IMG/VR virus record: IMGVR_UViG_3300037294_000266
Coordinates: 186,001 to 250,000 of that record
Direction: 5' to 3' (one strand)
Length of the DNA stretch: 64,000 bases
Shown here: positions 42,970 to 61,085 of the stretch, piece by piece
How positions within the stretch are numbered: position 1 is the stretch's first letter
Layout: every line of letters starts with the position of its first letter
Notes under the pieces: model-generated
Databases searched by the model: none
What the model saw: only the letters and a program-made list of their open reading frames with translations
What the model was told of the DNA's origin: nothing
Translations under genes and position numbers: made by a program

Positions 42970-43106
42970 TTATCGCCTTCTCCCACGATAATGGTATGCC
43001 AGTTGTTTGATATCTGTATTAAACACAGATTTGTTTAAAAAGAAATGACTCAGATTCTAGGGCCAGGTTCGGCACCAGAACCGTGGAGATCCCAACGGAG
43101 ACTGCA

Positions 43107-45500: not shown

Positions 45501-45569
45501 CCATTAACACGCTACCTCGAAAGGGGTAGCGTGTGTTATTCGAACCCCTTTTCGTGATGGAGCCTCTTC

Positions 45570-47165: not shown

Positions 47166-47678
47166 ATGTTTAAACACATTCAGGATTTTTCATTCGAAGG
47201 TGTTGACCTGTCAGCACTGAGGATAGATGATCTCCTGTCGAGTCCTCTTCCTTACGAACTCGGGCTGCCCAGGTATCTCGAGTACGGCGGTACACATTCG
47301 TTGTTTAACGCAGCTGAATACTTCGAACACAGTCAGACGAAACCCATTAAAGTAGAGGGGATAGAGAGACTCAGTGAATTACTGTACTCGACATCCCTTC
47401 GACTAGGCAGACACTTTAACCACACAGGTCCTGTGTCTTGCCACATGTTCATCTCGCCTGCACAATCACTTAGTTTCCCAATGCATTCTGATACAGACGA
47501 CGTAATCATCTACATGGTCAGCGGCCGTAAGGTTTATGAAGGTGTGGATGGGTCGTTAGAAGTGCGCGCTGGGGACAGTATCTATATTCCGCGTGGTACT
47601 TTGCACTGCGCGGTTAACACTGACGATTCCGTCATGCTCAGCTTTGGGCTTGAACGCTACCTGGAAGATAAATTGTGA
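47166..47678 (+). CDS. JmjC/cupin-type Fe(II)/2OG oxygenase
   Basis: SFPMHSD (HxD), VSGRK, AGDSIYIPRGTLH; start probably MFKHIQ (SD GAGGA). Confidence 0.85.
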   Translation: MFKHIQDFSFEGVDLSALRIDDLLSSPLPYELGLPRYLEYGGTHSLFNAAEYFEHSQTKPIKVEGIERLSELLYSTSLRLGRHFNHTGPVSCHMFISPAQSLSFPMHSDTDDVIIYMVSGRKVYEGVDGSLEVRAGDSIYIPRGTLHCAVNTDDSVMLSFGLERYLEDKL

Positions 47679-48718
47679 GTACTCACAAGACGATCTATGT
47701 CAAGACGACCGGGACATGCAACCTTAACTGCCAACACTGCTTCACGAATGGGAAGAACGGGGATAAAACTCAGTTTGTACCGGAGGTAGTAGCCGGATGG
47801 GTACATGATTACATGGCTCAGCATTCAGCCGATACCAGTTACCACATGGAGTTCCATGGCGGTGAGCCGTTCATTGTTCCATTGGAGAAGCTGAAACAGT
47901 TTGCTGATCATTTTGTTGACATGGAGAACGTTTCCATGTGTGCAAACAGCAATCTGACGTTTAAGCTGACCGATGAGTTAATCGCATTCATCAAAGACTA
48001 TCTTGGTGGGTACGTCGGCACCAGTTGGGACTATTGGATACGTTGGGGAAATGCTAAGCAGTTTGATCTCTGGAAGAAGAATCTGGAGACCCTGCGTTCG
48101 CACGGAATCGGCATCGGTGTTAAAGCATCGGTGAGCCGTCAGCTCATCGAGAAATCGCCAGACTGGTTCATTGATCAGATGGAAGCGCTGGCTATCGAAG
48201 AAGTGAGTCTTGAACGCCTCACCAATGATGGCAGTGCCGTAGATCACTCTGGGATCTTTCCTGACAATGAGGCGCAGGATAACTGGTACCTTGCACTGTA
48301 TCTCCGTTACAAAGAACGAAACCCTCGGGTAAAGATAAAGACCCTTGACATCATCGAACAGAAGCTCATCCAGAACATTGTCAAAGTAGATACCAATTGT
48401 CGAAACTGTGAGCAGAACCTTGTCACGATGAATTCAGATGGGTCTCTTTCAGGATGTCCTAACGCAGCAGCTAGTCTTCATCATGCTAGAATCGATGAAG
48501 GGGTTGAAACGTTCCTTTCTTCAGATGGGCGTATTGATCAGATTGCAAAGGAATTATCTTGGGGAGACACCTGCCTCAACTGTGACGTATTTGATCTTTG
48601 TGGCGGTGATTGTCATCGCTTACCGTGGCAAGAAGGTCGCTGCGGTGGGTTAAAGAACACGCTGCGACATCTTTCTGGCAGACAGCCACAGCAAAACAAC
48701 CTGATTATAAAGGTGTGA
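47675..48718 (+). CDS. Radical SAM/SPASM protein 1
   Basis: CNLNCQHC, FHGGEP, SPASM-type CRNC..GC..CLNCDVFDLCGGDC. Confidence 0.93.
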   Translation: MSTHKTIYVKTTGTCNLNCQHCFTNGKNGDKTQFVPEVVAGWVHDYMAQHSADTSYHMEFHGGEPFIVPLEKLKQFADHFVDMENVSMCANSNLTFKLTDELIAFIKDYLGGYVGTSWDYWIRWGNAKQFDLWKKNLETLRSHGIGIGVKASVSRQLIEKSPDWFIDQMEALAIEEVSLERLTNDGSAVDHSGIFPDNEAQDNWYLALYLRYKERNPRVKIKTLDIIEQKLIQNIVKVDTNCRNCEQNLVTMNSDGSLSGCPNAAASLHHARIDEGVETFLSSDGRIDQIAKELSWGDTCLNCDVFDLCGGDCHRLPWQEGRCGGLKNTLRHLSGRQPQQNNLIIKV

Positions 48719-48719
48719 C

Positions 48720-49253
48720 ATGACTGAAATAATTACACGTAACCGAATGGCCGTGAATGCCAACTCGTTGATTACCAATCGATGTAAAGCGGGCATTTCC
48801 TGGGGGACGAACAACTACCCAGCGAACTCCGATCCTGCTTGGTTTGCGGGCACTAACGCAGGCCCTGACGCTGCATTTGGCGGCTATCAGTTTTCAGCCG
48901 GAGTTGCTAACGCACAGCAGGCGATCGACGTACTTAAATATGTCTCTAATCTATTTGCCAGTGTCCGAACCACTCGAATTGTAATTTACATGTCTCACTT
49001 CTCGCTGGGGCAGACTGTTGTTTCCGATAACACTGCAGTTGCTTGGATCAATGCGCCTGCGGCTTTCAGTAATAACGTGGGAATGTGGTTTGCATCGGGA
49101 TATGACATGGATCTTAACGCGTTTAATAACTCGTGTGAGGCTATCTACAGTGCATATCTAGCAACGTGCCGTTATCAGACCGCTACGTTCACCCGAACCA
49201 TTTGCCACACTAGCTGTCATAGCAGCTGTCATAGCAGCCGAGGCCGCCGATGA
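48720..49253 (+). CDS. Putative modification-target protein with C-terminal (CHxS)3 repeat
   Basis: Ends ICHTSCHSSCHSSRGRR; Ala/Asn/Gly/aromatic-rich body with few acidic residues; directly after rSAM1. Confidence 0.75.
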   Translation: MTEIITRNRMAVNANSLITNRCKAGISWGTNNYPANSDPAWFAGTNAGPDAAFGGYQFSAGVANAQQAIDVLKYVSNLFASVRTTRIVIYMSHFSLGQTVVSDNTAVAWINAPAAFSNNVGMWFASGYDMDLNAFNNSCEAIYSAYLATCRYQTATFTRTICHTSCHSSCHSSRGRR

Positions 49254-49303
49254 CATGTCATGTAAGTGCCATCAAACGGTCTAGAGAAGCAACTGGAGAA
49301 CCC

Positions 49304-50086
49304 ATGGAACAGACTACTGAAGAAACCAAACCAGGCGGGGCGGTCATCGACGGGCCGGTGATTGTCATTGAAACCACAGCCAATATTCCAATGGACTTAC
49401 TTAAACGTAAGTTCAAAGAGAATATTGAGTTTGTCATCGATGTGGACAACAGTCGTCTTAAAGGCGACATGCTGCTCACCTATCTGTCAAACCTCAAGCT
49501 TAACTGCAAGCTAAAGTTTGGTAGTCTCGAATCGTCTCTCGAACTCCTGTCGTCGTATTTAAAGATGTCTACGGTCATGTCGATTCCAGAATTGGAAGAC
49601 CTGGCCATGAACATCATGCTGGCAGCGTATGGTAAAGATCATTACTGTCAATTCGATCCGACTGAGTTCATTCGTGACAACTCAGACATGATCGACGTGT
49701 GGCTCCGGCGGATGTGTGCACTCCCTTTGTTTGCATTACACTGTCATCCAACGACCAAGGATTTTGTTTCTCAATTCCCAGTCGATGAAGACCATGAGCT
49801 GCACGGTATCAACTACGTGCAACTGATCAAGCACGAACTGTTCCCAGAATTCATCAATGACTTCAATCAAGAAGACATGTCGTACAACAGGTTATTGTTC
49901 AACGAATACTGTTTTGCAGGGCTGAACCTGTTTAACTATTTCGCGATCCCCAATAACCCGTTGTTTGTGGGACTGATGGTACTCGACAAACCAGAACACC
50001 TCGAAGTGCTCATGGCTGCTGCTCATACGACTTACGTGACTGCTGAAACGATCATGAAGGAGCTCGAACATGTACCATCTGTGTAA
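49304..50086 (+). CDS. Hypothetical protein in the rSAM cluster
   Basis: SD GGAGA before MEQTT; an alternative coupled start at 49250 exists. Confidence 0.75.
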   Translation: MEQTTEETKPGGAVIDGPVIVIETTANIPMDLLKRKFKENIEFVIDVDNSRLKGDMLLTYLSNLKLNCKLKFGSLESSLELLSSYLKMSTVMSIPELEDLAMNIMLAAYGKDHYCQFDPTEFIRDNSDMIDVWLRRMCALPLFALHCHPTTKDFVSQFPVDEDHELHGINYVQLIKHELFPEFINDFNQEDMSYNRLLFNEYCFAGLNLFNYFAIPNNPLFVGLMVLDKPEHLEVLMAAAHTTYVTAETIMKELEHVPSV

Positions 50087-51116
50087 ATCGATTTACGTCG
50101 ATAGCGAACACCGCATCGACCGTAATAAAGATGTGATCACAATCTCTCCAAAGATCGGGTTTGAACACATCGCTGAAGAGAAAGGTGTGCAGATCGGTTA
50201 TGCTACAAGTCTGGATGAGTTGTCTCCTGAAGCGTTAGAGGCGATGCTCAACAAAGGTCTTGCTGCCGATGACCGTGTGACCGTCTATTGTGACGGTAAG
50301 ACGTACTTGCGTCTTTACACCATGTTGATAAAGGCTGTATTGCCGAACTTAACACTGGATCTGTTCCGATGGATCATGCTGTGTAAGAAGGCTACTTTCA
50401 ATACGACTATCGTTGCAGGCGGCGAGCCTAACGTGGATGTGTTGGCCAGTATCCAGATCAATAACAAGGTCTGTCACGAGCTCTTCATGGAAGCCAGTAC
50501 TCTGCAACCAGTGATCGATGCACTGGTCAATGAGAACCCAGACTTCCTTTCGCTGGAATGGCGCTTGATTCGTCTGCGTACTGAAGGTCGTGTCGGTAAG
50601 ATCCCAGGTGTACTCAACAACATCCTGCGTCGCATTGCTCTGAGCAATGCTCATGATGCCATGGACGTCTGGGGTCGTCATCTGACCCGCGAGAAGAACT
50701 GGGACATCGCTGGCGCTGATCTCGATACGCTTCTGAACGCACCCACTGTGTTCGAAGGGTGTTTGAACATGCCGCACTTGGCGAGTCAACAACTCCTGCG
50801 TCCTGGTCTGTATGATTTCTCACCGACCAAGCCCTGGATCATCGGCATGCTGCGTGAGGCCGTAGGTCTGATGGAAGTCCTTGAGGACGAGTCATCTGCT
50901 AAACGCGCTGCTCACATTCTTGAGCTGTTTAGTTCACCTGTCAATTTACGTGAGTCTGATGCATGCTTGCAGCGTGTTGTTGATATGTTTGCAGGTGAGA
51001 TGCGCATTGCACTGGCTTTCAAGGATACTGGCAAATACGACGAGAACTTGATTCGGTTCATTCTCGAATCAGATATCGAAGTGCTCAAAACTTCTCTTGA
51101 AGGGGCTGAATGGTAA
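50070..51116 (+). CDS. Hypothetical protein in the rSAM cluster (348 aa)
   Basis: SD AAGGAG; overlaps both neighbours. Confidence 0.8.
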   Translation: MYHLCKSIYVDSEHRIDRNKDVITISPKIGFEHIAEEKGVQIGYATSLDELSPEALEAMLNKGLAADDRVTVYCDGKTYLRLYTMLIKAVLPNLTLDLFRWIMLCKKATFNTTIVAGGEPNVDVLASIQINNKVCHELFMEASTLQPVIDALVNENPDFLSLEWRLIRLRTEGRVGKIPGVLNNILRRIALSNAHDAMDVWGRHLTREKNWDIAGADLDTLLNAPTVFEGCLNMPHLASQQLLRPGLYDFSPTKPWIIGMLREAVGLMEVLEDESSAKRAAHILELFSSPVNLRESDACLQRVVDMFAGEMRIALAFKDTGKYDENLIRFILESDIEVLKTSLEGAEW

Positions 51117-52108
51117 TGGACTTAATTCCCGTATTGAACATACTCGAGCAAAAGAAAGGTAAGTTGAAAGAAGCTCACCTCATTCTGTTCGAGTACTGTA
51201 ATTTACGGTGTTCGTTCTGCCACCAGGACCACGAATCCAGAATCGGCATCAATACGATCCAGCAGAAAGTAGACACACTCATTGCCAACTCAAACCCACG
51301 TGATGCCTACGTGTTGAATTTGACTGGCGGTGAGTTATTTCTTGATGAGTTCAGCGATGGGCTCTTTGAGGAATACTACGAAGCCGGTAAACGTCTCTTA
51401 GAACACTTCGACGATGCGTTGCTGGTGCTGGGTACCAATCTGATCTATCACAATGTAGCGCGGGTCATCAAGCTGGTCAATCGCTTAAAGCGATATGGTC
51501 GTGTGCAACTTGCCACGTCTTACGATCCAGCAGGACGATTCAACGCAGAACAACGGACACTGTTCTTCAAGAACCTTATCCATGTTCGTGACCTTGTACG
51601 CACGGTCAATGTGGTTATCACCAAGCAGAACATCCAGTCGTTTCTGGATGGACATGAAGGTGCCGAGTTCAAGTGGATGTGCGAACACTTTGACGTGTAC
51701 TTCGATCATTACATCCCAAGTCAGATGTACGAGTATATCCAGCCGGATGAAGACCTAATCAGTCAGCTCTACATGCACCTGAACAAACACTACCCAGACT
51801 CGTATCCGATCAAGGACTGGAAGAACAATGTGGAGAATACCACCACTTGTCGATCCACTAAGATCATCAATAAGGATAATGTCGTGACCACCTGTTGGTC
51901 AGAAGCTGGGAAAGACTCTATCTTGGACGAGCAAGAAGGTTTGCTAGCCAAGGATGAGGCCGAGTTGCGGTTCCTTGAGAAATACGACTGCTTTGCCTGT
52001 GAGTTCTACTCGCGATGCGGGATGCGATGTTTCTTGCATCATTCGTTTGTGGATGATGGACTTGACAATGTCTGTCAGATAAAAACGATGTTCAGAGCCA
52101 TCCTGTAA
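51116..52108 (+). CDS. Radical SAM protein 2 with C-terminal Cys cluster
   Basis: CNLRCSFC, LTGGE, CFACEFYSRCGMRC; TAATG coupling. Confidence 0.92.
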   Translation: MDLIPVLNILEQKKGKLKEAHLILFEYCNLRCSFCHQDHESRIGINTIQQKVDTLIANSNPRDAYVLNLTGGELFLDEFSDGLFEEYYEAGKRLLEHFDDALLVLGTNLIYHNVARVIKLVNRLKRYGRVQLATSYDPAGRFNAEQRTLFFKNLIHVRDLVRTVNVVITKQNIQSFLDGHEGAEFKWMCEHFDVYFDHYIPSQMYEYIQPDEDLISQLYMHLNKHYPDSYPIKDWKNNVENTTTCRSTKIINKDNVVTTCWSEAGKDSILDEQEGLLAKDEAELRFLEKYDCFACEFYSRCGMRCFLHHSFVDDGLDNVCQIKTMFRAIL

Positions 52109-52110
52109 TA

Positions 52111-52148
52111 CGTCATAGAGACCGGGCTGATGCCCGGTCTCTATGTTG
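52111..52148. terminator. Bidirectional hairpin-TATG terminator
   Basis: CATAGAGACCGGGC-TGAT-GCCCGGTCTCTATG. Confidence 0.75.
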
Positions 52149-52153
52149 AGTCG

Positions 52154-53212
52154 CTAGGTCACTGCAGCGCACAGATCTTTTACACCCGATGGTGTCAGGT
52201 AACGTTCGGTTCCGAAGAGGTCATTGATGATGTTAGAGATGAACTGTTTGTGTAGGTTAGCGACTGTATTTGCTGGAACGCCTTTTATGCCGAATTGATT
52301 ACAGTATTCGAACACCCCCCATTTCTTATCTTTGGTTACGAATAGATCCAAAGAACTGAGAGGACCTATCACGTCCCGCGCCAATGCGCTTAAATCGTGA
52401 ATTTGTTTAGAGGACAGCACCGACTCGATGGAAACAATGTCTTCACCAAGGATACTGTTTGTGTTCGATCCTGATGCTTGGGGAAACCCATCGGCATTGT
52501 AGACATTACGTTTCTGGACGTAAGCGATCTCGCTCTGCGCGCCAGTGATTATACGGTACTCAGATTCAATATTGTCAACAAACGATTGAATCGAATAACC
52601 TTGGGTTTTTAGACCAGACAGGCCTTCATCGACGTGATGTTCGCCGCGTGTAGAATAAGCCATATCCGGATCGTACTTATTCAGCTCTTCAAACAGTTCT
52701 TTGCTGGTAGACATGCCCTTGATGTACTTATCAAGAGCTTCAATCATTACAGCAAATGGAATCTTATCAGTATCGACAAGAAACTGTCCTATTCCACGAG
52801 CTCCGTCGTTAGGCTTGATGACTACCTTACCACTCGGGTTGACAAGACTACTGAGTCCCAGTGCTTGGGAGTGCACCCATGATTTAATTTTGACGAAGTC
52901 GTCATCGTTAAACTGTAACCGCCCAGCAGTGCGCTTGACATAGTTGTTGATCCGCATTGCCTGTTCGGTTTTACTATACCGGCGATTTACGAACACCATA
53001 TGTGGTGGCAGTATGCGCTCAGCAGCGATCTCATTGATCTTTAAAGTGCCGTCACTGATCATGAAATCAAAGTTGAAATGCTCCTCTCCATCAATGACGC
53101 TAAGTTGAGGGTCGTTGTGGAAGAATATTTGTTTATTGTTAATGACAATGCCTTGATGCAGCACCCAGAAATTGTTCATGAACTTACTAACAACGATATA
53201 TACACGTTCCAT
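52154..53212 (-). CDS. ATP-grasp ligase (RimK-like)
   Basis: VVIKPNDGARGIG, IQSFV..EYRII, SLDLF...VFEYCNQFG; start MERVY (SD AGGAG). Confidence 0.8.
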   Translation of the reverse strand: MERVYIVVSKFMNNFWVLHQGIVINNKQIFFHNDPQLSVIDGEEHFNFDFMISDGTLKINEIAAERILPPHMVFVNRRYSKTEQAMRINNYVKRTAGRLQFNDDDFVKIKSWVHSQALGLSSLVNPSGKVVIKPNDGARGIGQFLVDTDKIPFAVMIEALDKYIKGMSTSKELFEELNKYDPDMAYSTRGEHHVDEGLSGLKTQGYSIQSFVDNIESEYRIITGAQSEIAYVQKRNVYNADGFPQASGSNTNSILGEDIVSIESVLSSKQIHDLSALARDVIGPLSSLDLFVTKDKKWGVFEYCNQFGIKGVPANTVANLHKQFISNIINDLFGTERYLTPSGVKDLCAAVT

Positions 53213-53303
53213 CGGAGACTCCTGATGTTTAGACCATATAAGACCACAGGTAAGTAAAACATAACGATACAATCCCTATGTAATCTTTAATGCTGAGGTC
53301 GAC

Positions 53304-53552
53304 ATGGCAGTCTTTAAAGTAGGGCAAACTGTTTGGGCTGGTAAAATACTCTCCACAGATGCATGCGGTGACCATCCTGCATTTCTACATGCACGAAAGG
53401 GCGACGAGTTAATTGTAATAGCTCACGACGATGATCGCGTTTATCCCTACAGCGTAGCGGATAATCCAGAAGGTAAAGAATCTTTCCGTGCTGCGGCATC
53501 TGATCTGATGGGTCAGAAACCATTCAAGCATAACATCGAACAAGGCTGGTGA
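53304..53552 (+). CDS. Small hypothetical protein (82 aa), possible SH3-like barrel
   Basis: FKVGQTV start and beta-strand pattern; SD GAGGT. Confidence 0.7.
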   Translation: MAVFKVGQTVWAGKILSTDACGDHPAFLHARKGDELIVIAHDDDRVYPYSVADNPEGKESFRAAASDLMGQKPFKHNIEQGW

Positions 53553-53556
53553 GTCC

Positions 53557-53724
53557 ATGACAACTATCTTCGACACGCAAGACAAACCTTTCAAGCCACT
53601 TGAGAAAGATGACGAGTGGCTGTACCAGAAGATGAAGGAGCAGCAAGCGTCTGGTGATGTACGTCGAGATTTCCACAATGAATGGCTTGCACAGCCACCT
53701 GTTATCGAAACATCTGAGGACTGA
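53557..53724 (+). CDS. Small acidic protein (55 aa; not in ORF track)
   Basis: MTTIFDTQDKPFKPLEKDDEWLYQKMKEQQASGDVRRDFHNEWLAQPPVIETSED fills the gap before rSAM3. Confidence 0.6.
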   Translation: MTTIFDTQDKPFKPLEKDDEWLYQKMKEQQASGDVRRDFHNEWLAQPPVIETSED

Positions 53725-53727
53725 TCT

Positions 53728-54816
53728 GTGGATGTTATAGTTAAACCGACCGTTGCTTGTAATTTTAAGTGTACATTCTGTTCGAGTACTCATTTATCAG
53801 AAAACCCAACAGATATCGTAGAGCTCTCTACGCTTAAGCAGTTTATCCAGCGCTTCCCAGAAACCAATACCGTGATCGTCAATGGTGGAGACCCGCTCAT
53901 GATGCCTCCTGAGTATTACTGGGAGATGATTAAGATGCTGGATGAACTTGATAGTCATGCGAGCATCAGTTTCACCAGTAACCTCTGGCCTTTCTACAAG
54001 AAGCCTGAGATATGGGAAGAGTTATTCAAACATGATCGCCTAGGTATCACGACTTCTTTCCAATACGGTGACAAGCGCCTCAAAGGCGACAAGTCAGTCT
54101 TCACAGAAGAAGACTTCAGGAATGTCAGTGACATGTTCCTTGAACGCATTGGTTACCGTCCTAGCTTCATTGCCGTCATTGACAAGGACAACGAGCACAC
54201 TGTCTTGGACACGGTTCGTCTGGCTAAGGAAATGGGTGTTGAAGCCAAGATCAACCACGTTGTTGCTTCAGGACCCGAAGTGGATAATCGTGGCATCATC
54301 ATGGGCAGTCAGAATAACTTCTTCACTCAGGCGGATATCTACCGTCATTATGTCCAGATCTACGATGCCGGTCTGATGGAGTGGGAATACAACACCAAAC
54401 AGATGGCTAAGAAGCTTAAGGGATTGGCCACTACCTGTCCGTTAGCACGGAACTGCGACAGTGGTATTCGAGCATTGCAGCCTGGCGGTGGTTATTATTC
54501 ATGTGGGTCGTTTGGTGATGATGGCGAACATCCCATTGACTTCGAAGCAGAGATGGCCGGCGAGTTCTTCACCCCACTGCAATACGAAGCCGACTTAGAC
54601 TCGATGAAAGAGTCGTGCTACACATGCCCTATGTTCAGTATTTGTAATGGCTGTCGTAAAACCATTGCAGACACCAAGCGAATGGGACTTGTAGAACATC
54701 ATTGCAAAACCATGAAAGAGATTGCTCCACGGATCATCGATATCAACGGACTGACCGGTAAGGTATTTCCAACGCCATACGTTGACGAATCAGTGCAGCT
54801 CATTGCTAAGGCATAA
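53728..54816 (+). CDS. Radical SAM/SPASM protein 3
   Basis: KPTVACNFKCTFC, NGGDP, CPLARNC..SC..CYTCPMFSICNGC. Confidence 0.93.
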   Translation: MDVIVKPTVACNFKCTFCSSTHLSENPTDIVELSTLKQFIQRFPETNTVIVNGGDPLMMPPEYYWEMIKMLDELDSHASISFTSNLWPFYKKPEIWEELFKHDRLGITTSFQYGDKRLKGDKSVFTEEDFRNVSDMFLERIGYRPSFIAVIDKDNEHTVLDTVRLAKEMGVEAKINHVVASGPEVDNRGIIMGSQNNFFTQADIYRHYVQIYDAGLMEWEYNTKQMAKKLKGLATTCPLARNCDSGIRALQPGGGYYSCGSFGDDGEHPIDFEAEMAGEFFTPLQYEADLDSMKESCYTCPMFSICNGCRKTIADTKRMGLVEHHCKTMKEIAPRIIDINGLTGKVFPTPYVDESVQLIAKA

Positions 54817-54819
54817 TTC

Positions 54820-55746
54820 ATGACAAAGCCTAAAATAAATATCAGTATCAACCCGTGGTATTTCTGTAATTTTAAATGTGACTTCTGCTACTTGACTCCT
54901 GAGCAATTAGGGGATCGAAAGCGTCTTGACCTCGAGACACTCGAACAACGGCTCGATGAACTCCTGCAACATTACGTTATCGGACACATCGATCTATATG
55001 GTGGTGAAGTATTACTACTGCCTGAAGAATACATCAATGCTATCCGTGACATGTTACACGTCCGAGGTATTGATGACTTGGTTCTGGTTACTAACCTGTC
55101 TCATCTCCACCCAGTCGTTCACGAGAAGGATTGGGAAATATCGGTCTCGTATGACTTTGATGCTCGTGAGAAACATGAACATGTGTTACAGAACATGCTT
55201 CTCATGACACAACCTTTCAGTATCTTGTCTCTGGCAGGGCGCCAGTTTCTCGATAAGGTTACTCCAGACATCTACGTCGACACGATGAATATGTTTGGTA
55301 ATCTGAAAGGTTGTGAGATCAAACCTTACAGTAGTAACCAAGCCAACGACCAGCCTGTGACGTACCGAGAATACGAAGAGTTTGTCTGGGCAGTGATTGA
55401 TCATCCGGCTCGTAACTTCTACTTTGAGAACGCCACTCAGGTTGAAGAAGCATTTGAAGGCACTCGTAATTCATTCAGCGATGACCACATCTACATCACA
55501 CCTGAAGGTAAGTTTGCAGTACTGGAGTTCGATGACAATGATCATGAATTCTTTATGCCACTGGAATCGATTGCAGAGTACCAACAGTGGTGTGTAATCG
55601 AGAAGAGCCGTGTTAATGTCAATCCGATCTGTTCGGCATGTCCTTACAACGGATCTTGTCTCTCTGAACACCTTCGTAATGTAACGTCCCTCGATAATTC
55701 CTGTAATGGGTTCCGAGGACTCATTGATAAATGGGGTGCATCGTGA
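54820..55746 (+). CDS. Radical SAM protein 4
   Basis: CNFKCDFCY, LYGGEV, CSACPYNGSCLSEH..SC. Confidence 0.92.
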   Translation: MTKPKINISINPWYFCNFKCDFCYLTPEQLGDRKRLDLETLEQRLDELLQHYVIGHIDLYGGEVLLLPEEYINAIRDMLHVRGIDDLVLVTNLSHLHPVVHEKDWEISVSYDFDAREKHEHVLQNMLLMTQPFSILSLAGRQFLDKVTPDIYVDTMNMFGNLKGCEIKPYSSNQANDQPVTYREYEEFVWAVIDHPARNFYFENATQVEEAFEGTRNSFSDDHIYITPEGKFAVLEFDDNDHEFFMPLESIAEYQQWCVIEKSRVNVNPICSACPYNGSCLSEHLRNVTSLDNSCNGFRGLIDKWGAS

Positions 55747-56795
55747 AAGCTCAACATCTTGAAGTAGAACACAGGCAGCGCCTGGAGATCACTCTCGACA
55801 TCTTTCGAGGGTGTGGTCATAGCTGCTCAGGCTGCATGATCAATACGTCGCTGGGTGGGGATGTCAACGACATTCCTGAACTCCATGCACTGATCAGTGA
55901 AATGGTTGACGTTGGGTATGTGGCGTTTGATCTCGGTGTAGGTCCTACTGATTACATGTCTGCAGACAACACCGCCGAGGTCATGGACCATCCGGTCTTT
56001 CAAGAGATGGCGCAGAAATTCCATCAGGTTACGTTCAACGCAGCGTTCCTTGAGAAAGACATGGAGAAGTATAGGTCGATGTGCGAAGACATTGACCTGG
56101 CACTCCCTGGTAAATCTATACGCTTCTTAATTCCGGCAGCGCCTCCATTTTTCAAGACACACAAGTTTGGCGACATGATTGAATCCAAACTTGAGTTCGT
56201 GAAGGATAATCTACATAGCGCTTACCTGAATGAAGCTGGCTTTGTGGTTAACTGCACGGCAGACACTGTGGGTGATGACTTTGAGGCCATGATGAATAAT
56301 GGCTTTGATATTGAATTCCCTGTTGATAAGGATGATATCTTGAATATCCCTTACGGTCGAGCGCCTGTAAAGGATCTGATGACGGCACAGCACATCAAGC
56401 GGATGTCTCATCGCATCACTCAGTTCTATTCAACACTGAATGGTACAGATGAGCGTCGTCGCAATCCTGATCTCTGCTACCACACCGGTACCATGGTCAA
56501 TCTCCTGTACACCGGCGGTAAGCTTTACTGGGTGCCTTTCCTTAAAGACGACTGCGCGTTCCTTGAAGATGCTTTCTCTGTGTCGAAGCCCTGGTCTATG
56601 GATAATCTCCTAAAGACTCGTCAGGCGGCTCTAGAGAGCGCTCTAGACTACCTTAAGGACACGCCGTGCATGACCTGTCCTTATCTGAGCAGTTGTTCAG
56701 AGAAAGGTATCATTAACATCATGGAACACATGCAGATCCGTGATTGTCTAGTTGGGTTAGAACATGTTAAATCAACCGCAGAGTCCAGCGTTTAA
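55743..56795 (+). CDS. Atypical radical SAM-like protein 5
   Basis: CGHSCSGC; GGE replaced by VGPTD; C-terminal CMTCPYLSSC..C; GTGA coupling. Confidence 0.8.
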   Translation: MKAQHLEVEHRQRLEITLDIFRGCGHSCSGCMINTSLGGDVNDIPELHALISEMVDVGYVAFDLGVGPTDYMSADNTAEVMDHPVFQEMAQKFHQVTFNAAFLEKDMEKYRSMCEDIDLALPGKSIRFLIPAAPPFFKTHKFGDMIESKLEFVKDNLHSAYLNEAGFVVNCTADTVGDDFEAMMNNGFDIEFPVDKDDILNIPYGRAPVKDLMTAQHIKRMSHRITQFYSTLNGTDERRRNPDLCYHTGTMVNLLYTGGKLYWVPFLKDDCAFLEDAFSVSKPWSMDNLLKTRQAALESALDYLKDTPCMTCPYLSSCSEKGIINIMEHMQIRDCLVGLEHVKSTAESSV

Positions 56796-57744
56796 TCTGA
56801 CCCTTGAGATTCTACAGGGGTGTAAGTACAACTGCGTAGGCTGTATGGTCGATAAAGACTACGAGCCTCTTATTCCATTTGACCAGGACACGGATAAGAT
56901 CCTTGAAATGGTCGATGCGATGAAAGCTGAAGGGTATCGGACTCGAGAGTTTACAATCGGGCCAGTGGATGTCATCAGCTCGAAGACAGGGGATTCGATA
57001 TTCGATCATCGCTTGATTAAGGGGCTGGCTGAGCGGTTTGAATCTGTCGTCATTCCGTTAGCACTGATGAAAGGGAAGTCGTTTACACTGGCCACTCCTT
57101 TCCAGCTAAAGAGTACTGACAACCCTAAACACGTCGATCTAATAAAGCGTCGTGTGATGTTCATCCAAGCGTCATTGCCTGACGTTAAATTTGAGCTACT
57201 GTACATTACCGTTAACATGATTGGCGATGCAGTAGATGCATTTGATGTTGCATTAAACCGAAGACTCCATGATATTGATTTTGGTGTCAGACGACTCATT
57301 GAGTTTGTATTCCCTCACCCTAGAAAGGGGTTGGATAATTTACTCATGCAGAACTTGTTTAAGCGCAACTTCGGACATTTCTGTGACGTCATTAAACAGT
57401 GTAAGAACACTGATCTAAATCGTCATCTCATTAAACCAGCTGATGATAGCTACGAAACAACCTATCGTGATGGCAGACTGTATTACACACCGACACTGAT
57501 CGAGAAGTTTCCTATATTCGATCCGATGTTTGAAATAACGTCTCCATGGACTCTCGAGAAGATAGAGCTGTTCAAGATGGATCTCTATCTAGACAGTCTG
57601 GTTAAATATTCAGTGAGCGGACCGTGCAGTAAGTGTTGTAATTTAAGTAAGTGTGCTGAGGGCGATGTTCACTCCATCATGACTCATTTGAATGACTCGA
57701 CTTGTCTGGTATCTCTTTATAACGACTGGAGTGTGATAACGTGA
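56764..57744 (+). CDS. Atypical radical SAM-like protein 6 (paralogue of 5)
   Basis: CKYNCVGC; IGPVD; C-terminal CSKCCNLSKC..C. Confidence 0.8.
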   Translation: MLNQPQSPAFNLTLEILQGCKYNCVGCMVDKDYEPLIPFDQDTDKILEMVDAMKAEGYRTREFTIGPVDVISSKTGDSIFDHRLIKGLAERFESVVIPLALMKGKSFTLATPFQLKSTDNPKHVDLIKRRVMFIQASLPDVKFELLYITVNMIGDAVDAFDVALNRRLHDIDFGVRRLIEFVFPHPRKGLDNLLMQNLFKRNFGHFCDVIKQCKNTDLNRHLIKPADDSYETTYRDGRLYYTPTLIEKFPIFDPMFEITSPWTLEKIELFKMDLYLDSLVKYSVSGPCSKCCNLSKCAEGDVHSIMTHLNDSTCLVSLYNDWSVIT

Positions 57745-58178
57745 GTAAGGAAGAACAGCTTACTTTTATTCAGTTAGAACAGATGCCTTTTCCAGATTGG
57801 CTGATAGACGCTGTCCTTTGTGAACCTAACAAAGCGTTCATTGAGACAGCGTCTATCAACGACTACGTCAACAGCATCATACTGCCAATTGTTGCTGATG
57901 AACTCAACTGGCCAGACAATCTGCAAGTGACAGCAAACCATGTCCATTGTAGCAGTGACGGACTCGAGCCACACGACCATCTCCCTCACGAATACACTTC
58001 AGTACTCTATCTCATTGATGCCGAAGGTGATCTGATTGTTCATGACGATGGCGAACACCGTGTCACGCCAGCAGAAGGTCGGTTTGTTCTGATGGACGCT
58101 CGTCTTAAACACAGTGTTGAACCATCCAACTGCATGCGTATTTCTCTGGTGACCAACTATGCAACCACCTGCCTATAA
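57741..58178 (+). CDS. Fe(II)/2OG-dependent oxygenase
   Basis: PHDH...YTSVLYL...LKHSVEP...RISLVTN. Confidence 0.82.
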   Translation: MSKEEQLTFIQLEQMPFPDWLIDAVLCEPNKAFIETASINDYVNSIILPIVADELNWPDNLQVTANHVHCSSDGLEPHDHLPHEYTSVLYLIDAEGDLIVHDDGEHRVTPAEGRFVLMDARLKHSVEPSNCMRISLVTNYATTCL

Positions 58179-58593
58179 AGACTATCAACTGCTCTACGAT
58201 GAATATGTCCAAGAGCATGCTGACGATTTTGCTAACATGGAAATCGTTGAGGATCCTGAACTTGTGGAAAACGCGCTCCATTACTTCAAGGAAGCGTCTT
58301 TCCCGCTCATCTATCCGGCTAAGAGTTATGCGGTGGCTATCATTTACGCCACTAAGATTCATGAACTCTACGATATCCCAGTCAAGACGACCTTGAATGA
58401 TCCCGATCTATTCTTAGGACATGACCGGTACTTCGTTCCGTATGAGCTAGATCCCCACACCTACGACGCTATCTTGGCTCGCTTAGAGACTATTCCTAAT
58501 TGGATGGAATCTGGCTGGGCTCCGCAGTCGGTGAAGTACTGTCTTTTAGAATGTACTGAAGACGGTGTCAACTCGGTATTGAGCGGAGAGTGA
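58159..58593 (+). CDS. Hypothetical protein in the rSAM cluster (144 aa)
   Basis: Acidic ORF overlapping its neighbours; IYPAKSYAVAIIYA core. Confidence 0.75.
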   Translation: MQPPAYKDYQLLYDEYVQEHADDFANMEIVEDPELVENALHYFKEASFPLIYPAKSYAVAIIYATKIHELYDIPVKTTLNDPDLFLGHDRYFVPYELDPHTYDAILARLETIPNWMESGWAPQSVKYCLLECTEDGVNSVLSGE

Positions 58594-58595
58594 CC

Positions 58596-59153
58596 ATGAA
58601 CTATCTAGAGCCGTGGAAGACTGAGATCGGGCATTTCAACGTGGCTGATCAGTTTGACATGACGGCCTTTGGTGAAGAGATATTTACGTTATTTGCCATG
58701 ACCAATGGAGAGGACGAAAGTCAACGTAAGATTGACCCTTCGACGTTTCCTGTCCTTCTGAAGATGCGTGATGAAACAATAACGCCAGCGGTCATTGAAT
58801 ATACGAAACGTTGTTTCAACTACGACATGGATAAGTTCTATGTTGAAAGTAATGGTAAGTGGATTGCAGAAGGTGAGGGACTGTATCCACATTGGCATCC
58901 TGGCTCAGTCATCTCGGTCATCTGCTATCCAGTAGATTCTGCAAATGGTTTGAACATGTTCGATCCTAAGGGGAACGCCATTCGGGGTTATCCTAAAGAG
59001 ATGCGATGGGGACATTTTGCCAACTTGAACATCTCGCCTAAAGCAGGTGACATCTTCATATTCCCCAGTTACCTCCAACACAGCGTAAGTCATGTGACAG
59101 AAGAGGTGCGGTTGTCTCTGCTCCACGAGTATTATGTCACCCACAATTTATAG
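58596..59153 (+). CDS. Fe(II)/2OG oxygenase, TIGR02466-like
   Basis: HWHPGSVISVICYP, FDP, PKAGDIFIFPSYLQHSV, RLSL. Confidence 0.87.
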   Translation: MNYLEPWKTEIGHFNVADQFDMTAFGEEIFTLFAMTNGEDESQRKIDPSTFPVLLKMRDETITPAVIEYTKRCFNYDMDKFYVESNGKWIAEGEGLYPHWHPGSVISVICYPVDSANGLNMFDPKGNAIRGYPKEMRWGHFANLNISPKAGDIFIFPSYLQHSVSHVTEEVRLSLLHEYYVTHNL

Positions 59154-59165
59154 GAAGTACGTACA

Positions 59166-59717
59166 ATGAAAATCATTCAGCCGTGGAAGATAGAGATCGC
59201 CCAGTACAATCTTCTCGAACAGGTGGATAACAGTGCCATCACCGAAGAAGTCCACATGCTTCACTGCCTATCTCCACGTGACTCTCTGACACCTCTGGTA
59301 GTGACTCCAGAGCAATTCCCAGCGTTGTGTCACTTCCGTGACAAGATTGTTCACGGACTGGTGGTTGATTACATTCGCCGAGTGTTCGGTGTTGAGCCAT
59401 TCGATATTGCTACCGATACGTTTGGCAAGGTGTTCGACAAGCAACAAGGACTTGGCAGTCACTTGCATGGCAACTCGTGCCTGACGAGCGTGTACTATCC
59501 TAGCGATTCTGATGCAGGGATGTCTCTGGCAGACCCGCGCTTCAATGCATCTCGTGGATATCCGCGTTCGATACGTGATAACCACTTTGGCGAGTTCTAT
59601 GTGGCGCCTAAGGCAGGTGATCTCTGGATCATGCCTAGCTATATCCAGCACAGTGTTGCTCCAAGTACAGAAGAGATGCGTCTCTCTCTAATCAATGACT
59701 TTCATTTCAAGGCATAA
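59166..59717 (+). CDS. Fe(II)/2OG oxygenase, TIGR02466-like (tandem paralogue)
   Basis: HLHGNSCLTSVYYP, DPR, PKAGDLWIMPSYIQHSV, RLSL. Confidence 0.87.
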   Translation: MKIIQPWKIEIAQYNLLEQVDNSAITEEVHMLHCLSPRDSLTPLVVTPEQFPALCHFRDKIVHGLVVDYIRRVFGVEPFDIATDTFGKVFDKQQGLGSHLHGNSCLTSVYYPSDSDAGMSLADPRFNASRGYPRSIRDNHFGEFYVAPKAGDLWIMPSYIQHSVAPSTEEMRLSLINDFHFKA

Positions 59718-59719
59718 TC

Positions 59720-60379
59720 ATGACTGATGAAGAGAATGGCTTGTATCCAGGTGTAGACCGTGGCATGTTCCGGGTCATGCGTCTTCTAGATAACTCAGGT
59801 GTCCAATTGAAAGCACAGGTACGGATCAAGAATCTGTCTGTCTTCAACTTCCTGAGCGATCTCCAATATGCTGTAATTGGCTATGGTCTCGAATGGTGGC
59901 GTGATGGTGAACCAGGTCCTCATGAGGCCGGTGAAGCAAATCCGTACATCCCACGCGGCCGTCCTAACATCAGTCGGTTGTACTTCAGGGGTAAGACCAG
60001 TATTACTCCAAAGATGTTGCACTTAGAGGATGCGGTCATCAATGACTTCATCAACTCTAAAGCTCTGGCTGATCCGATGACATACTCGACGTATGCATTG
60101 GAAGCCGCTGAACAAACCAGCAGTGCGGCTGTATGGCGTGATCTGGGTAAAACAGCATTCCAGTATGCCAACGCAGTTCATATTACCAAGTTAGAAGCTT
60201 CCTCCACCACCCCTCTTGAAATTGTGGTTGAGGGTCTGCGCTTCGAGTACCGTCGTAAAGCGTCTCCAGATATTGTGAAGACTGCAGACATTAAACCGTA
60301 CAAGTTCACCAAACTTCGTGATTGTTACGAAGCCATGCAAACATTTATCGAAAATGAGGTTACCAATGGCGATTTCTAA
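59720..60379 (+). CDS. Hypothetical protein (219 aa)
   Basis: Last ORF of the cluster; overlaps the endolysin start. Confidence 0.75.
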   Translation: MTDEENGLYPGVDRGMFRVMRLLDNSGVQLKAQVRIKNLSVFNFLSDLQYAVIGYGLEWWRDGEPGPHEAGEANPYIPRGRPNISRLYFRGKTSITPKMLHLEDAVINDFINSKALADPMTYSTYALEAAEQTSSAAVWRDLGKTAFQYANAVHITKLEASSTTPLEIVVEGLRFEYRRKASPDIVKTADIKPYKFTKLRDCYEAMQTFIENEVTNGDF

Positions 60380-61085
60380 GAATCGACTCATGGATCTACA
60401 GCGTGACATGAAAGCACTGGGTGTTTACTTCGGTGGTATCGATGGTGCATGGGGTCAGTTGTCCCACGGTGCATTTGTAAATGCTCGTCGAATGGCCAGT
60501 AAGAACAAGACAACCGCGCCTGAAGGCATGAGCGAATTATTGTTCACATACTGTAAAGCCCACGCATGGTCTGACAAAGTCAGTGACGAGTTCATTCTCG
60601 AGACCAAACGTATTGCCACTGATCTTGGCATGACGTTCCAAGGTACTGACGAATTATTGTCCTGCATGGCCTTCGAAACCGGTGAGACCTTCTCACCGAC
60701 AATCAAGAACGGTGCCGGTGCTCCGTACTACGGCATTATCCAGTTTGGCGCAGCGGCTGCCAAAGATGCAGGCACGTCTATTCCTGCATTGTTGAAGATG
60801 ACCAACGTAGAACAGCTTCAGTATGTCTACAACTTCTTCAAGCCTTACAAAGGCAAGTTGAATGATTTGTCTGACTGTTACATGCGCATACTCTGGCCTG
60901 CCGCAGTCGGTAAACCTTCTGATTACGTGCTGTTCGACAAGATGAATGCCAAGTCTAAAGCGTATGTTCAGAACAAAGGTCTGGACATCGACAAGGACGG
61001 GAAGATTACAAAAGCTGAAGCGGCTGCTAAAGTGATGCAGAAGCTTGTAGCTGGCTTACATCCAGGTAACCTGCGTGTAGCTTAA
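60366..61085 (+). CDS. Modular endolysin (peptidoglycan-binding domain + lysozyme-like/transglycosylase domain)
   Basis: LQRDMKALGVY.GGIDGAWG (PG-binding), MAFETG catalytic Glu, GIIQF, EF-hand-like DIDKDGKITKAE; start MAISK (SD GAGGT). Confidence 0.85.
   Translation: MAISKNRLMDLQRDMKALGVYFGGIDGAWGQLSHGAFVNARRMASKNKTTAPEGMSELLFTYCKAHAWSDKVSDEFILETKRIATDLGMTFQGTDELLSCMAFETGETFSPTIKNGAGAPYYGIIQFGAAAAKDAGTSIPALLKMTNVEQLQYVYNFFKPYKGKLNDLSDCYMRILWPAAVGKPSDYVLFDKMNAKSKAYVQNKGLDIDKDGKITKAEAAAKVMQKLVAGLHPGNLRVA

What the first reader, a model, noticed from the sequence alone, without database searches (positions are those of the whole stretch)
47166..60379. Phage-encoded RiPP-like modification cluster (6 radical SAM, 4 Fe/2OG oxygenases, ATP-grasp, Cys/His-repeat target) between tail fibres and endolysin
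Seen: in 13 kb, six CxxxCxxC proteins (four with GGE/GGD plus C-terminal Cys clusters, two atypical), one JmjC, three HxH...H oxygenases, an ATP-grasp ligase, four unknowns and a protein ending (CHxS)3RGRR. The + strand genes are tightly coupled and start 22 bp after the second tail-fibre gene with no terminator. Established: SPASM radical SAM enzymes, JmjC hydroxylases and ATP-grasp ligases commonly modify peptides and proteins, and bacterial His-Xaa-Ser (HxsA/B/C) and CXXX-repeat systems pair radical SAM maturases with such repeats. From recall, the phiKZ gp145/gp146 fibre genes adjoin the gp144 endolysin, so this block looks like an accessory insertion. Inference: a late-expressed pathway that cross-links or hydroxylates a virion, probably fibre-tip, protein, i.e. 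RiPP chemistry used in phage morphogenesis or receptor binding. rSAM-rich loci may occur in other jumbo phages, but I know of no characterised product.
Basis: partly seen in the sequence, partly recalled or inferred. Interest (0 to 1): 0.93.

Follow-up and report, generated by a model that had tools for sequence, protein, structure and literature searches.

The report
Phage radical-SAM cassette for fibre protein
A jumbo phage carries a 13-kb enzyme set (six radical-SAM enzymes, four iron oxygenases) that in hundreds of uncultured phages always travels with a tail-fibre-linked virion protein ending in the near-invariant 16 residues CHxSCHxSCHxSRGRR, which points to an undescribed enzymatic modification of a phage particle protein.

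Summary
Window 47166-60379 holds a cupin/JmjC-like oxygenase, six CxxxCxxC proteins, three 2OG oxygenases, five proteins that match no named family, and a 177-aa protein ending (CHxS)3RGRR. The ATP-grasp call is only sub-threshold.

New evidence:
- **Tail conservation.** The 16-residue tail is almost invariant in 241 of 261 family members, while codons vary freely and the protein bodies diverge to about 20% identity.
- **Co-occurrence.** The tailed protein and the enzymes co-occur in both directions: 57 of 58 loci, and 45 of 46 loci anchored on rSAM3.
- **Distribution.** The cassette occurs in three unrelated phage lineages, directly after tail-fibre genes. It is essentially absent from 185,579 bacterial species genomes.
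- **Virion evidence.** The Atu_ph07 homologue gp170 (31.9 kDa) is a published virion protein that peaks in the top gel band, with 87-127 kDa proteins. The enzymes are not in that virion list.
- **Fusion.** One relative is fused to a glycine-rich tail-fibre domain.
- **Folds.** The tailed protein and its most widespread partner (U278) give confident models with no PDB match.

Best reading: a phage-specific maturation system that cross-links or hydroxylates the C-terminal tail of a fibre-associated virion protein. The chemistry is inferred, not shown. I found no paper that describes it.

The parts
43083..45500 (+). Tail-fibre-like virion protein fibA (context, directly upstream)
   Evidence: phrog_2163 virion structural protein 7.9e-136; several tail-fibre PHROGs; syntenic in DT01 and eight other chimallin-type loci
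45570..47144 (+). Tail-fibre-like virion protein fibB with NPHxxTKxQVGL repeats; stop is 22 bp before the cassette
47166..47678 (+). Cupin / JmjC_2-like Fe oxygenase (alternative start 47151); always paired with the next gene in the jumbo-phage architecture
   Evidence: Cupin_2 2.2e-10, JmjC_2 2.4e-9; cupin cluster present in 27 loci; SD before 47166
47675..48718 (+). rSAM1: radical-SAM/SPASM-like enzyme; nearest named families are cyclophane-forming peptide maturases, PapB and anSME
   Evidence: AmcB 1.7e-14, PapB 1.4e-13, anSME 1.6e-13, SPASM 26.4 bits against cut-off 27; all far below family cut-offs
48720..49253 (+). CHxS-tailed protein, 177 aa, the proposed substrate; confidently modelled alpha/beta body with no PDB match
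49203..49250 (+). The 16-residue C-terminal tail CHTSCHSSCHSSRGRR (residues 162-177), immediately before the stop
   Evidence: C, H, Ser4, R13, R15 and R16 invariant (Ser8 58 of 59) in 59 distinct 51-nt tails with free synonymous codon use; low pLDDT, so probably flexible; 12-nt tandem repeat 49212-49238
49250..50086 (+). U278: most widespread partner (52 loci), function unknown, confident model with no PDB match
   Evidence: phrog_20767 unknown function
50070..51116 (+). U348: unknown, restricted to the chimallin-type lineage
51110..52108 (+). rSAM2: radical-SAM with C-terminal Cys cluster; present in 49 loci, both architectures
52154..53272 (-). ATP-grasp-like accessory gene, not part of the conserved system
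   Evidence: sub-threshold ATP-grasp hits only; present only in L004-L006
53304..53552 (+). Small ORF, 82 aa, lineage-specific, unknown
   Evidence: phrog_21763 unknown function
53728..54816 (+). rSAM3: best conserved enzyme of the cassette (54-77% identity across the lineages with isolates)
   Evidence: PF04055 44.3 bits; DynA 5.1e-13, anSME 1.6e-11
54820..55746 (+). rSAM4: radical-SAM, core member
   Evidence: PF04055 36.8 bits
55731..56795 (+). rSAM5: divergent CxxxCxGC radical-SAM-like protein; family has 4-5 copies per marine cassette
56764..57744 (+). rSAM6: divergent CxxxCxGC radical-SAM-like protein
   Evidence: PF04055 sub-threshold 19.9 bits
57741..58178 (+). 2OG-Fe(II) oxygenase-like (borderline)
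   Evidence: PF13640 26.4 bits against cut-off 27
58159..58593 (+). U144: core partner (41 loci), 16 invariant residues, unknown function
   Evidence: in 50,697 phage records it hits exactly the same 15 records as rSAM3
58590..59153 (+). 2OG-Fe(II) oxygenase (Oxy_5 type)
   Evidence: PF13759 1.4e-10
59166..59717 (+). 2OG-Fe(II) oxygenase (Oxy_5 type)
   Evidence: PF13759 8.1e-11
59720..60379 (+). Unknown 219-aa protein, lineage-specific
60318..61085 (+). Lytic transglycosylase-like lysin (downstream boundary, not part of the system)
   Evidence: 243 phage records with homologues, several annotated transglycosylase

Best explanation
This is a phage-specific protein-maturation cassette.

Its substrate is the protein encoded at 48720-49253. 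That protein has a hypervariable, folded body and carries a flexible, nearly invariant C-terminal tail, (CHxS)3RGRR. It is a component of the particle associated with the tail-fibre apparatus.

Inferred steps:
1. Dedicated SPASM-type radical-SAM enzymes (rSAM1-4, plus the divergent CxxxCxGC paralogues rSAM5/6) act on the tail in the infected cell. They are helped by two widespread proteins of unknown fold, U278 and U144.
2. The most likely reactions are carbon-carbon or carbon-nitrogen cross-links from each His to the residue two positions on (the H-x-S triplets), and/or thioether links from the Cys residues.
3. The cupin/JmjC-like and 2OG oxygenases add hydroxyl groups, with Arg and His as candidate sites.
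4. The product is a rigid, cross-linked C-terminal knot. It locks the protein into, or stabilises it on, the fibre. This could explain why the homologue in phage Atu_ph07 runs far above its own mass on SDS gels.

Shown here: gene content, the tail and its selection, co-occurrence, lineage distribution, fibre synteny and the fusion protein. From the literature: virion presence. Inferred: that the tail is the substrate, the chemistry, and the role at the fibre.
For: 1. Tail under protein-level selection. In 59 distinct 51-nt tails, C, H, Ser4 and the three Arg are invariant (Ser8 58 of 59, Gly 58 of 59). Codons vary freely: TGT/TGC about 1:1, Ser uses AGY and TCN, Arg uses CGN and AGR. A stop always follows. 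241 of 261 family members end (CHxx)3RxRR.
2. Bodies diverge while enzymes stay conserved. Bodies fall to 24-26% identity between lineages, whereas rSAM3 keeps 54-77%. The shared substrate feature must therefore be the tail.
3. Two-way co-occurrence. 57 of 58 tail-anchored loci carry the enzymes. 44 of 46 full-flank rSAM3-anchored loci carry a canonical tail ORF 2.9-8.4 kb upstream, and one more carries a variant tail. U144 and rSAM3 hit the same 15 of 50,697 phage records.
4. Enzyme class. The nearest named families are peptide or protein cross-linking rSAM/SPASM maturases: AmcB, YhhB, FxsB, DynA, PapB, anSME and QhpD. Some cassettes add a B12-binding rSAM. His-to-C-beta three-residue cyclophanes made by such enzymes are established (PMC11499958).
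5. Fibre and virion link. The tail gene lies directly after tail-fibre genes in chimallin-type phages, in Atu_ph07-type giant phages and in marine T4-like contigs.
6. Published proteome. Atu_ph07 gp170 (31,894 Da) was detected in virions with 8 peptides and 35% coverage. It is most abundant in gel band 1, alongside 87-127 kDa proteins, whereas other 28-34 kDa proteins peak in bands 7-8. None of the rSAM gene products is in the virion list (PMC6102473 Table S5).
7. Fusion. P0171 fuses the family to a Gly_rich_2 domain that matches the 'tail fiber assembly' PHROG, inside a full cassette.
8. Phage-restricted. Only 3 short contigs in 185,579 species genomes carry it, and each carries the same cassette.
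Against: - No mass-spectrometric or biochemical evidence of any modification exists.
- The high-MW migration of gp170 comes from one gel-slice proteome. It could reflect SDS-resistant oligomers or aggregation rather than covalent links.
- In the RSL2/RSF1/FLC6 group the homologue is not among the proteins listed as structural. That list is annotation transfer only (PMC8066314).
- All matches to named maturase families are far below family cut-offs, so the chemistry cannot be read from homology.
- No RiPP recognition element was identified.
- U278 and U144 have no assignable function.
- Three Cys plus three His could simply bind metal.
- The marine architecture lacks the cupin-rSAM1 pair, so the reactions may differ between lineages.
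Confidence: 0.6

Rival explanations
1. The tail is the core of a released natural product or cofactor (a true RiPP, metallophore or redox cofactor). The large body would serve only as leader or scaffold. The product would act in the infected cell or on neighbouring cells rather than in the particle.
For: C-terminal cores modified by SPASM radical-SAM enzymes are known (established knowledge: mycofactocin; the FXSXX-COOH family appears). The enzyme repertoire of rSAM, B12-rSAM and Fe/2OG resembles large RiPP pathways. A Cys3His3 motif suits metal binding.
Against: No protease is recognisable in the conserved core. Bodies are 126-318 aa (453 aa in one fusion), confidently folded and hypervariable, unlike leaders. 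The Atu_ph07 homologue is in the virion. The gene follows fibre genes, and one relative is fused to a fibre domain.
Confidence: 0.12
2. The tail is an unmodified metal-binding or Fe-S-binding motif on a trimeric fibre protein, comparable to the His-coordinated metal sites in other phage fibres and spikes (from my own knowledge). The radical-SAM and 2OG enzymes would act on something else, such as another virion protein or the variable body.
For: Cys/His spacing suits metal binding. Modules come in units of three repeats and are duplicated as units. Marine phages rich in rSAM genes also encode Fe-S assembly genes (PMC5332604).
Against: This does not explain why 4-10 dedicated enzymes co-occur almost perfectly with the tail. 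It also does not explain the invariance of Ser and of RGRR. The bodies are too variable to be a shared substrate.
Confidence: 0.1
3. The enzymes are auxiliary metabolic or nucleic-acid-modifying genes (DNA or nucleotide modification, host metabolism), and the CHxS protein is an unrelated neighbour.
For: Earlier papers suggested DNA repair or metabolism for these rSAM genes (PMC8541153). RSL2-type cassettes contain two DHFR-annotated genes. There are weak viperin-like hits to the rSAM core.
Against: Co-occurrence with the tail protein is strict in both directions across unrelated lineages. Best matches are to peptide and protein maturases with C-terminal auxiliary-cluster motifs. No nucleotide-handling domain is in the conserved core. 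The cassette sits in structural modules.
Confidence: 0.05
4. The matured protein is an ejected or surface counter-defence or entry factor. For example, a basic, modified HxS-type tail might escort DNA through the periplasm, or might counter host systems such as the bacterial HXS defence, whose HxsA effector also has rSAM-matured HxS repeats.
For: Bacterial HxsA is an rSAM-matured HxS-repeat protein that blocks phage DNA entry and binds DNA (PMC13128918). The phage tail has three HxS triplets followed by RGRR. The protein is virion-borne.
Against: There is no homology to HxsA or HxsD, and only core-level similarity to HxsB/C. PADLOC gives no system-level hit. Fibre synteny and the fibre-domain fusion point to the adsorption apparatus instead.
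Confidence: 0.08

Closest known systems
Three-residue cyclophane ('triceptide') and related rSAM/SPASM cross-linking maturases (AmcB, YhhB, FxsB, GrrM, HtkB/HaaB, DynA, DarE)
   Same: These are the best-scoring named families for rSAM1 and rSAM3. Both have a CxxxCxxC core plus a C-terminal auxiliary Cys cluster. The substrate carries repeated short motifs in which an aromatic or His residue is linked to the residue two positions on. H-x-S fits that pattern, and His cross-links are documented (PMC11499958).
   Different: All scores are far below family cut-offs (at most 53.6 bits against 300-650). The substrate is a folded virion protein of 126-318 aa rather than a short peptide. Each repeat also carries an invariant Cys. 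There are 4-10 rSAM genes per cassette. The system is phage-restricted.
Bacterial HXS anti-phage system (HxsA/B/C/D; PMC13128918)
   Same: His-Xaa-Ser repeats in a protein matured by two radical-SAM enzymes plus a small partner. The modification there was mapped to the last HxS repeat next to basic residues.
   Different: No hit of the phage protein to HxsA, and none to HxsD. HxsB/C similarity is limited to the rSAM core (27.9 and 24.7 bits against cut-offs of 370 and 268). The phage repeat is CHxS at the extreme C-terminus. The phage system is carried by the virus and linked to fibres. It is not a periplasmic defence effector.
Quinohemoprotein amine dehydrogenase gamma-subunit maturation by QhpD; anaerobic sulfatase maturase (anSME)
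   Same: SPASM radical-SAM enzymes that modify a protein that stays part of a larger assembly. From my own knowledge, the reactions are Cys thioethers for QhpD and Cys/Ser to formylglycine in a C-x-x-x-R context for anSME. Both families appear among the hits. The last repeat, CHSSR, resembles a C-x-x-x-R context.
   Different: Matches are sub-threshold only. There is no quinone-forming or sulfatase context. The target family and partners (U278, U144) are unrelated.
Phage fibre-tip adhesin and assembly proteins of the T4 gp38 type
   Same: A small, hypervariable protein encoded directly after the fibre gene. Tandem paralogues occur in marine phages. One relative is fused to a glycine-rich domain that matches the 'tail fiber assembly' PHROG.
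   Different: The body gives no detectable similarity to any solved structure. No known adhesin carries an enzyme-dependent C-terminal tag or needs radical-SAM enzymes.

Membership tests
Radical SAM superfamily (PF04055) | CxxxCxxC [4Fe-4S]/SAM motif in a partial TIM-barrel domain that scores above the Pfam cut-off of 29.5 bits | tested here: met
   Met for 53728-54816 (44.3 bits) and 54820-55746 (36.8 bits). The motif is present but the score is sub-threshold for 47675-48718 (25.3), 51110-52108 (24.1) and 56764-57744 (19.9). 55731-56795 has no Pfam hit but carries CGHSCSGC, and 121 of 122 members of its family keep the motif.
SPASM/twitch radical-SAM subfamily (TIGR04085) | C-terminal auxiliary Fe-S cluster domain with conserved Cys motifs | tested here: inconclusive
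   rSAM1 scores 26.4 bits against cut-off 27, and rSAM3 scores 18.2 bits. A C-terminal CxxC(3-7)C motif is present in 95 of 95, 41 of 41 and 119 of 122 members of the three rSAM clusters.
HXS system (HxsA, HxsB, HxsC, HxsD) | HxsA-family repeat protein (TIGR03979), HxsB (TIGR03978) and HxsC (TIGR03977) above equivalog cut-offs, and HxsD (TIGR03976) | tested here: not met
   The CHxS protein has no NCBIfam hit. HxsB scores 27.9 bits against 370 and HxsC 24.7 against 267.9. No HxsD-like hit appears in any of the 20 proteins scanned.
Named cyclophane, ranthipeptide or sactipeptide maturases and CXXX-repeat maturase | Score above the curated NCBIfam cut-off for an equivalog or subfamily | tested here: not met
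   The best hit of any cassette enzyme is 53.6 bits (AmcB, cut-off 425). PapB scores 50.8 against 340, anSME 50.5 against 349 and DynA 48.7 against 450.
RiPP pathway in the strict sense | Short precursor with leader or follower and core; recognition element; proteolytic release of the modified core | tested here: not met
   The substrate is 126-318 aa (453 aa in one fusion) with a confidently folded body. No protease or RRE was recognised by Pfam, NCBIfam or PHROGs. The Atu_ph07 homologue is retained in virions. Release was not tested experimentally.
JmjC/cupin Fe(II)/2OG oxygenases | Double-stranded beta-helix with HxD/E...H iron triad; Pfam score above cut-off | tested here: met
   Cupin_2 scores 40.5 against 27.2 and JmjC_2 37.2 against 22. 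HSD...H is in the sequence. PF13759 is met for 58590-59153 and 59166-59717. 57741-58178 is borderline.
ATP-grasp ligases | ATP-grasp fold that scores above the Pfam cut-off | tested here: inconclusive
   GSH-S_ATP scores 14.5 bits (cut-off 23) and ATP-grasp_3 13.3 bits (cut-off 23.2), over the same residues 130-196. PDB sequence search gave nothing relevant.
Phage tail-fibre module | Encoded with fibre genes and present in the virion | tested here: met
   Fibre-family genes lie directly upstream in three lineages. Atu_ph07 gp170 was detected in virions. There is a fusion to a tail-fibre-type Gly-rich domain. The position on the fibre itself is not testable with these tools.

The most novel reading that the evidence does not exclude
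Radical-SAM chemistry is used to build a part of a virus particle. Up to ten dedicated radical-SAM enzymes would convert an invariant 16-residue Cys/His/Ser/Arg tail into a polycyclic, possibly intermolecularly cross-linked, structure. That structure would rivet a hypervariable receptor-binding protein to the tail fibre, or would itself engage the cell surface. This would be the first enzyme-forged, RiPP-like post-translational structure in a virion. It would also bring new cross-link chemistry and two new protein folds (the substrate body and U278).
Probability: 0.35. Interest if true: 0.95.

Novelty: new variant of a known kind. Interest (0 to 1): 0.86.

Why it matters
Papers on jumbo phages and marine viral genomes have repeatedly noted 'unusually many radical SAM genes' without explaining them (PMC8541153, PMC12390700, PMC5332604).

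This analysis gives those genes a common, testable substrate. That substrate is a phage-restricted family of at least about 800 clusters at 50% identity, whose members share a near-invariant C-terminal tag.

If the tag is modified as proposed, three things follow:
- It would extend radical-SAM peptide cross-linking from secreted natural products to the construction of virus particles.
- It would define new enzyme-substrate pairs for cross-link chemistry on a 16-residue portable tag.
- It would bear on how large phages attach receptor-binding proteins and diversify host recognition.

Tried and rejected
- **Nucleotide similarity.** Megablast of the cassette and of window 20000-44000 against 50,697 phage records found only short 74-77% patches in pPa_SNUABM_DT01.
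- **The 177-aa protein.** Pfam, NCBIfam and PADLOC gave nothing, and PHROGs gave only an unknown-function family.
- **Structure and profile searches.** A profile of the family against PDB sequences found nothing real. Foldseek of the confident model against PDB found nothing (best E 0.17), and BFVD returned only family members. U278 gave nothing by profile against PDB or by Foldseek (best E 0.64).
- **U144.** The profile hits to designed PPR proteins are repeat artefacts, with no stretch passing on its own.
- **phiKZ insertion idea.** The order differs and there is no detectable homology. Erwinia phage Phobos has a different gene set in the corresponding slot.
- **Literature.** A search for the tail letters returned only German-language noise. 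Searches for phage + RiPP + radical SAM + tail fiber or virion found no relevant paper.
- **RSL2/RSF1 proteome.** The paper is not held.
- **Promoters.** The sigma-70 scan is uninformative: 22 sites found against 24.7 expected. These phages also use their own RNA polymerases.
- **Defence-system membership.** Rejected. PADLOC gave only weak viperin hits to the rSAM core.

Full report
**What is in the window.** The window is part of IMG/VR contig IMGVR_UViG_3300037294_000266, 266,646 bp. This is an uncultured jumbo phage. [quoted passage not shown] DT01 is fully syntenic over this region.

Two tail-fibre-like genes (43083-45500 and 45570-47144) are followed after 22 bp by these genes:
- A cupin/JmjC_2-like gene at 47166-47678, with a GAGGA ribosome-binding site.
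- An rSAM/SPASM-like gene at 47675-48718.
- The 177-aa gene at 48720-49253, whose product ends CHTSCHSSCHSSRGRR.
- Two unknowns at 49250-50086 and 50070-51116.
- A second rSAM at 51110-52108.
- A minus-strand gene at 52154-53272.
- A small ORF at 53304-53552.
- Four more CxxxCxxC genes between 53728 and 57744.
- A borderline 2OG oxygenase at 57741-58178, an unknown at 58159-58593, and two clear 2OG oxygenases between 58590 and 59717.
- An unknown at 59720-60379, followed by a transglycosylase-like lysin.

The ATP-grasp assignment rests only on sub-threshold hits.

**The key finding: an invariant tail on a variable protein.** The homologous position in DT01, in Burkholderia phage SURPRISE13 (RSL2/RSF1/FLC6 group) and in the unrelated 490-kb Agrobacterium phage Atu_ph07 encodes proteins of 178, 186 and 296 aa. 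Their bodies are 24-50% identical to the window protein. All end CHxSCHxSCHxSR(G/S)RR followed by a stop.

A scan of IMG/VR with this alignment gave 55 loci, including the window's own contig. Together with the three isolate loci, 57 of 58 contain an ORF ending in the motif.

In 59 distinct 51-nt tails, Cys, His, the fourth-position Ser and the three Arg are invariant. Codons vary freely: TGT/TGC about 1:1, Ser from both codon families, and Arg from CGN and AGR. The conservation therefore lies in the protein, not in the DNA.

The family has 122 clusters at 90% identity in one database and 811 clusters at 50% identity (E up to 0.001) in another. Of the 261 sequences retrieved, 241 end (CHxx)3RxRR. 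Most of the rest are near variants or truncated. Rare members carry two to five modules.

**Co-occurrence.** Mapping the window proteins onto all loci and clustering de novo gives a core set:
- U278 in 52 loci.
- The tailed protein in 51 loci.
- The rSAM1/3/4 family in 49 loci.
- rSAM2 in 49 loci.
- The divergent CxxxCxGC rSAM5/6 family in 42 loci, with 154 genes.
- U144 in 41 loci.
- A tail-fibre family directly upstream in 42 loci.
- The cupin in 27 loci.

Two architectures exist. Jumbo phages have cupin-rSAM1-tail protein-U278-...-rSAM2-rSAM3-rSAM4-U144-2OG. Marine contigs with T4-like structural genes, about 150 kb long, have a tandem pair of 126-140-aa tailed proteins. An rSAM6-like gene and four or five rSAM5-like paralogues follow that pair, and rSAM2, U144, rSAM4 and rSAM3 lie on the other strand. 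That makes eight or more rSAM genes. A published note records a marine T4-like genome with 12 rSAM genes (PMC5332604); I did not check it for the tail.

The reverse test also holds. Of the 46 best rSAM3-anchored IMG/VR loci with full flanks, 44 have a canonical tail ORF 2.9-8.4 kb upstream. One has a variant tail and one has none.

Among 50,697 isolate records, rSAM3 and U144 hit exactly the same 15 records.

Across 185,579 bacterial and archaeal species genomes only three short contigs match. Each carries the same cassette, most likely as phage sequence in the assembly.

**Link to the fibre and the particle.** The gene upstream of the tailed protein is a fibre-type gene in all three lineages.

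The published Atu_ph07 virion proteome lists gp170. Its stated mass of 31.89 kDa equals the 31,894 Da I computed for the homologue. It was found with 8 peptides and 35% coverage in bands 1-9, and was most abundant in band 1. Band 1 otherwise holds 87-127 kDa proteins, whereas other 28-34 kDa proteins peak in bands 7-8. None of the neighbouring rSAM products appears in the list (PMC6102473 Table S5).

One family member, P0171, is fused at its N-terminus to a Gly_rich_2 domain. That domain matches the 'tail fiber assembly' PHROG, and the gene sits in a complete cassette that lacks a separate upstream fibre gene.

**Structures.** An AlphaFold2 model of the 177-aa protein is confident (pLDDT 90.4, pTM 0.84). 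It has an alpha/beta body and a low-confidence tail. It has no PDB match, and in BFVD it matches only its own family. U278 is also confidently modelled (pLDDT 89.1) and has no PDB match.

**Mechanism.** Enzymes that stay 54-77% identical across lineages cannot share a substrate in bodies that are about 25% identical. The invariant tail is the only common feature, so I take it to be the substrate (inference).

The nearest named relatives of rSAM1 and rSAM3 are cyclophane-forming and other cross-linking rSAM/SPASM maturases, PapB, anSME and QhpD. All are far below family cut-offs, so these are analogies rather than memberships.

His-to-C-beta links across three residues are documented for such enzymes (PMC11499958), and the three H-x-S triplets fit that pattern. 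Each triplet is preceded by an invariant Cys, which suggests thioethers as well. The cupin matches the JmjC_2 family. From my own knowledge, that family includes protein Arg and His hydroxylases, so the His or RGRR residues are candidate hydroxylation sites. Some cassettes add a B12-binding rSAM.

**Comparison with known systems.** The bacterial HXS defence system matures an HxS-repeat effector with two rSAM enzymes (PMC13128918). It works in a similar way, but the membership tests fail.

The phiKZ 'insertion' argument is not supported in detail. The cassette is nonetheless clearly an accessory, mobile module, given its rarity among isolates and its presence in unrelated lineages.

**Literature.** Five genome papers list these rSAM genes without explaining them. 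Searches found no description of the tail or of a virion modification.

**Verdict.** The main interpretation is supported by comparative and proteomic evidence, but the chemistry is unproven. This is a new variant of rSAM-dependent peptide or protein maturation in a new biological setting.

Noticed in passing
window 52154-53272 (-); L001:21946-22683: An ATP-grasp-like gene interrupts the cassette on the opposite strand, but only in the window phage and its two closest relatives. In DT01 a gene annotated as an ATP-grasp (PF18299) domain protein lies elsewhere, after the transglycosylase.
   Followed up: partly
L002:10855-12032: In the RSL2/RSF1/SURPRISE13 group, two genes annotated as dihydrofolate reductase sit inside the cassette between rSAM genes. 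Their role there is unexplained.
   Followed up: no
L058:13509-15239; L065:16420-17985: Some cassettes contain an additional B12-binding radical-SAM protein. From my own knowledge, this class includes C-methyltransferases.
   Followed up: partly
P0148; L009:9992-10675; L023:10001-10705; L061:3-362: Some family members carry two to five (CHxS)2-3 modules separated by NV(P)V before the final RGRR. This suggests the three-repeat module is a functional unit.
   Followed up: partly
L117 near 8115-8190: A variant tail has four CHxS repeats and ends GDGPGNGGGV instead of RGRR. L100 has an rSAM3 relative but no tail ORF within 10 kb.
   Followed up: partly
L061 (NZ_JACOQI010000054.1, 4,268 bp): A short contig in a Dysosmobacter segnis isolate assembly carries a chimallin-type cassette with very high similarity to the window enzymes. 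This is probably contaminating phage sequence.
   Followed up: no
window 43083-47144: Both fibre-like proteins contain several copies of an NPHxxTKxQVGLxxVxN repeat. The repeat produces spurious sub-threshold hits to the CIS13 and thiovarsolin NCBIfam models.
   Followed up: no
L046:7571-9667; L040:4755-6578; L010:4136-7393; L058:1339-8442: The fibre proteins upstream of the tailed gene in non-chimallin lineages share a conserved C-terminal stretch of about 50 residues (KGRVPVK..G...KGD.I...IG.ALE...IEV.I). It could be the docking site for the tailed protein.
   Followed up: no
window 61106-61129 (-): The strongest terminator-like hairpin in the region (10-bp stem, 7 GC pairs) lies just after the lysin gene and marks the end of the plus-strand block.
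   Followed up: no
L040:3393-4106: A homing-endonuclease-like gene (phrog_314) lies among the structural genes upstream of the Atu_ph07 cassette.
   Followed up: no
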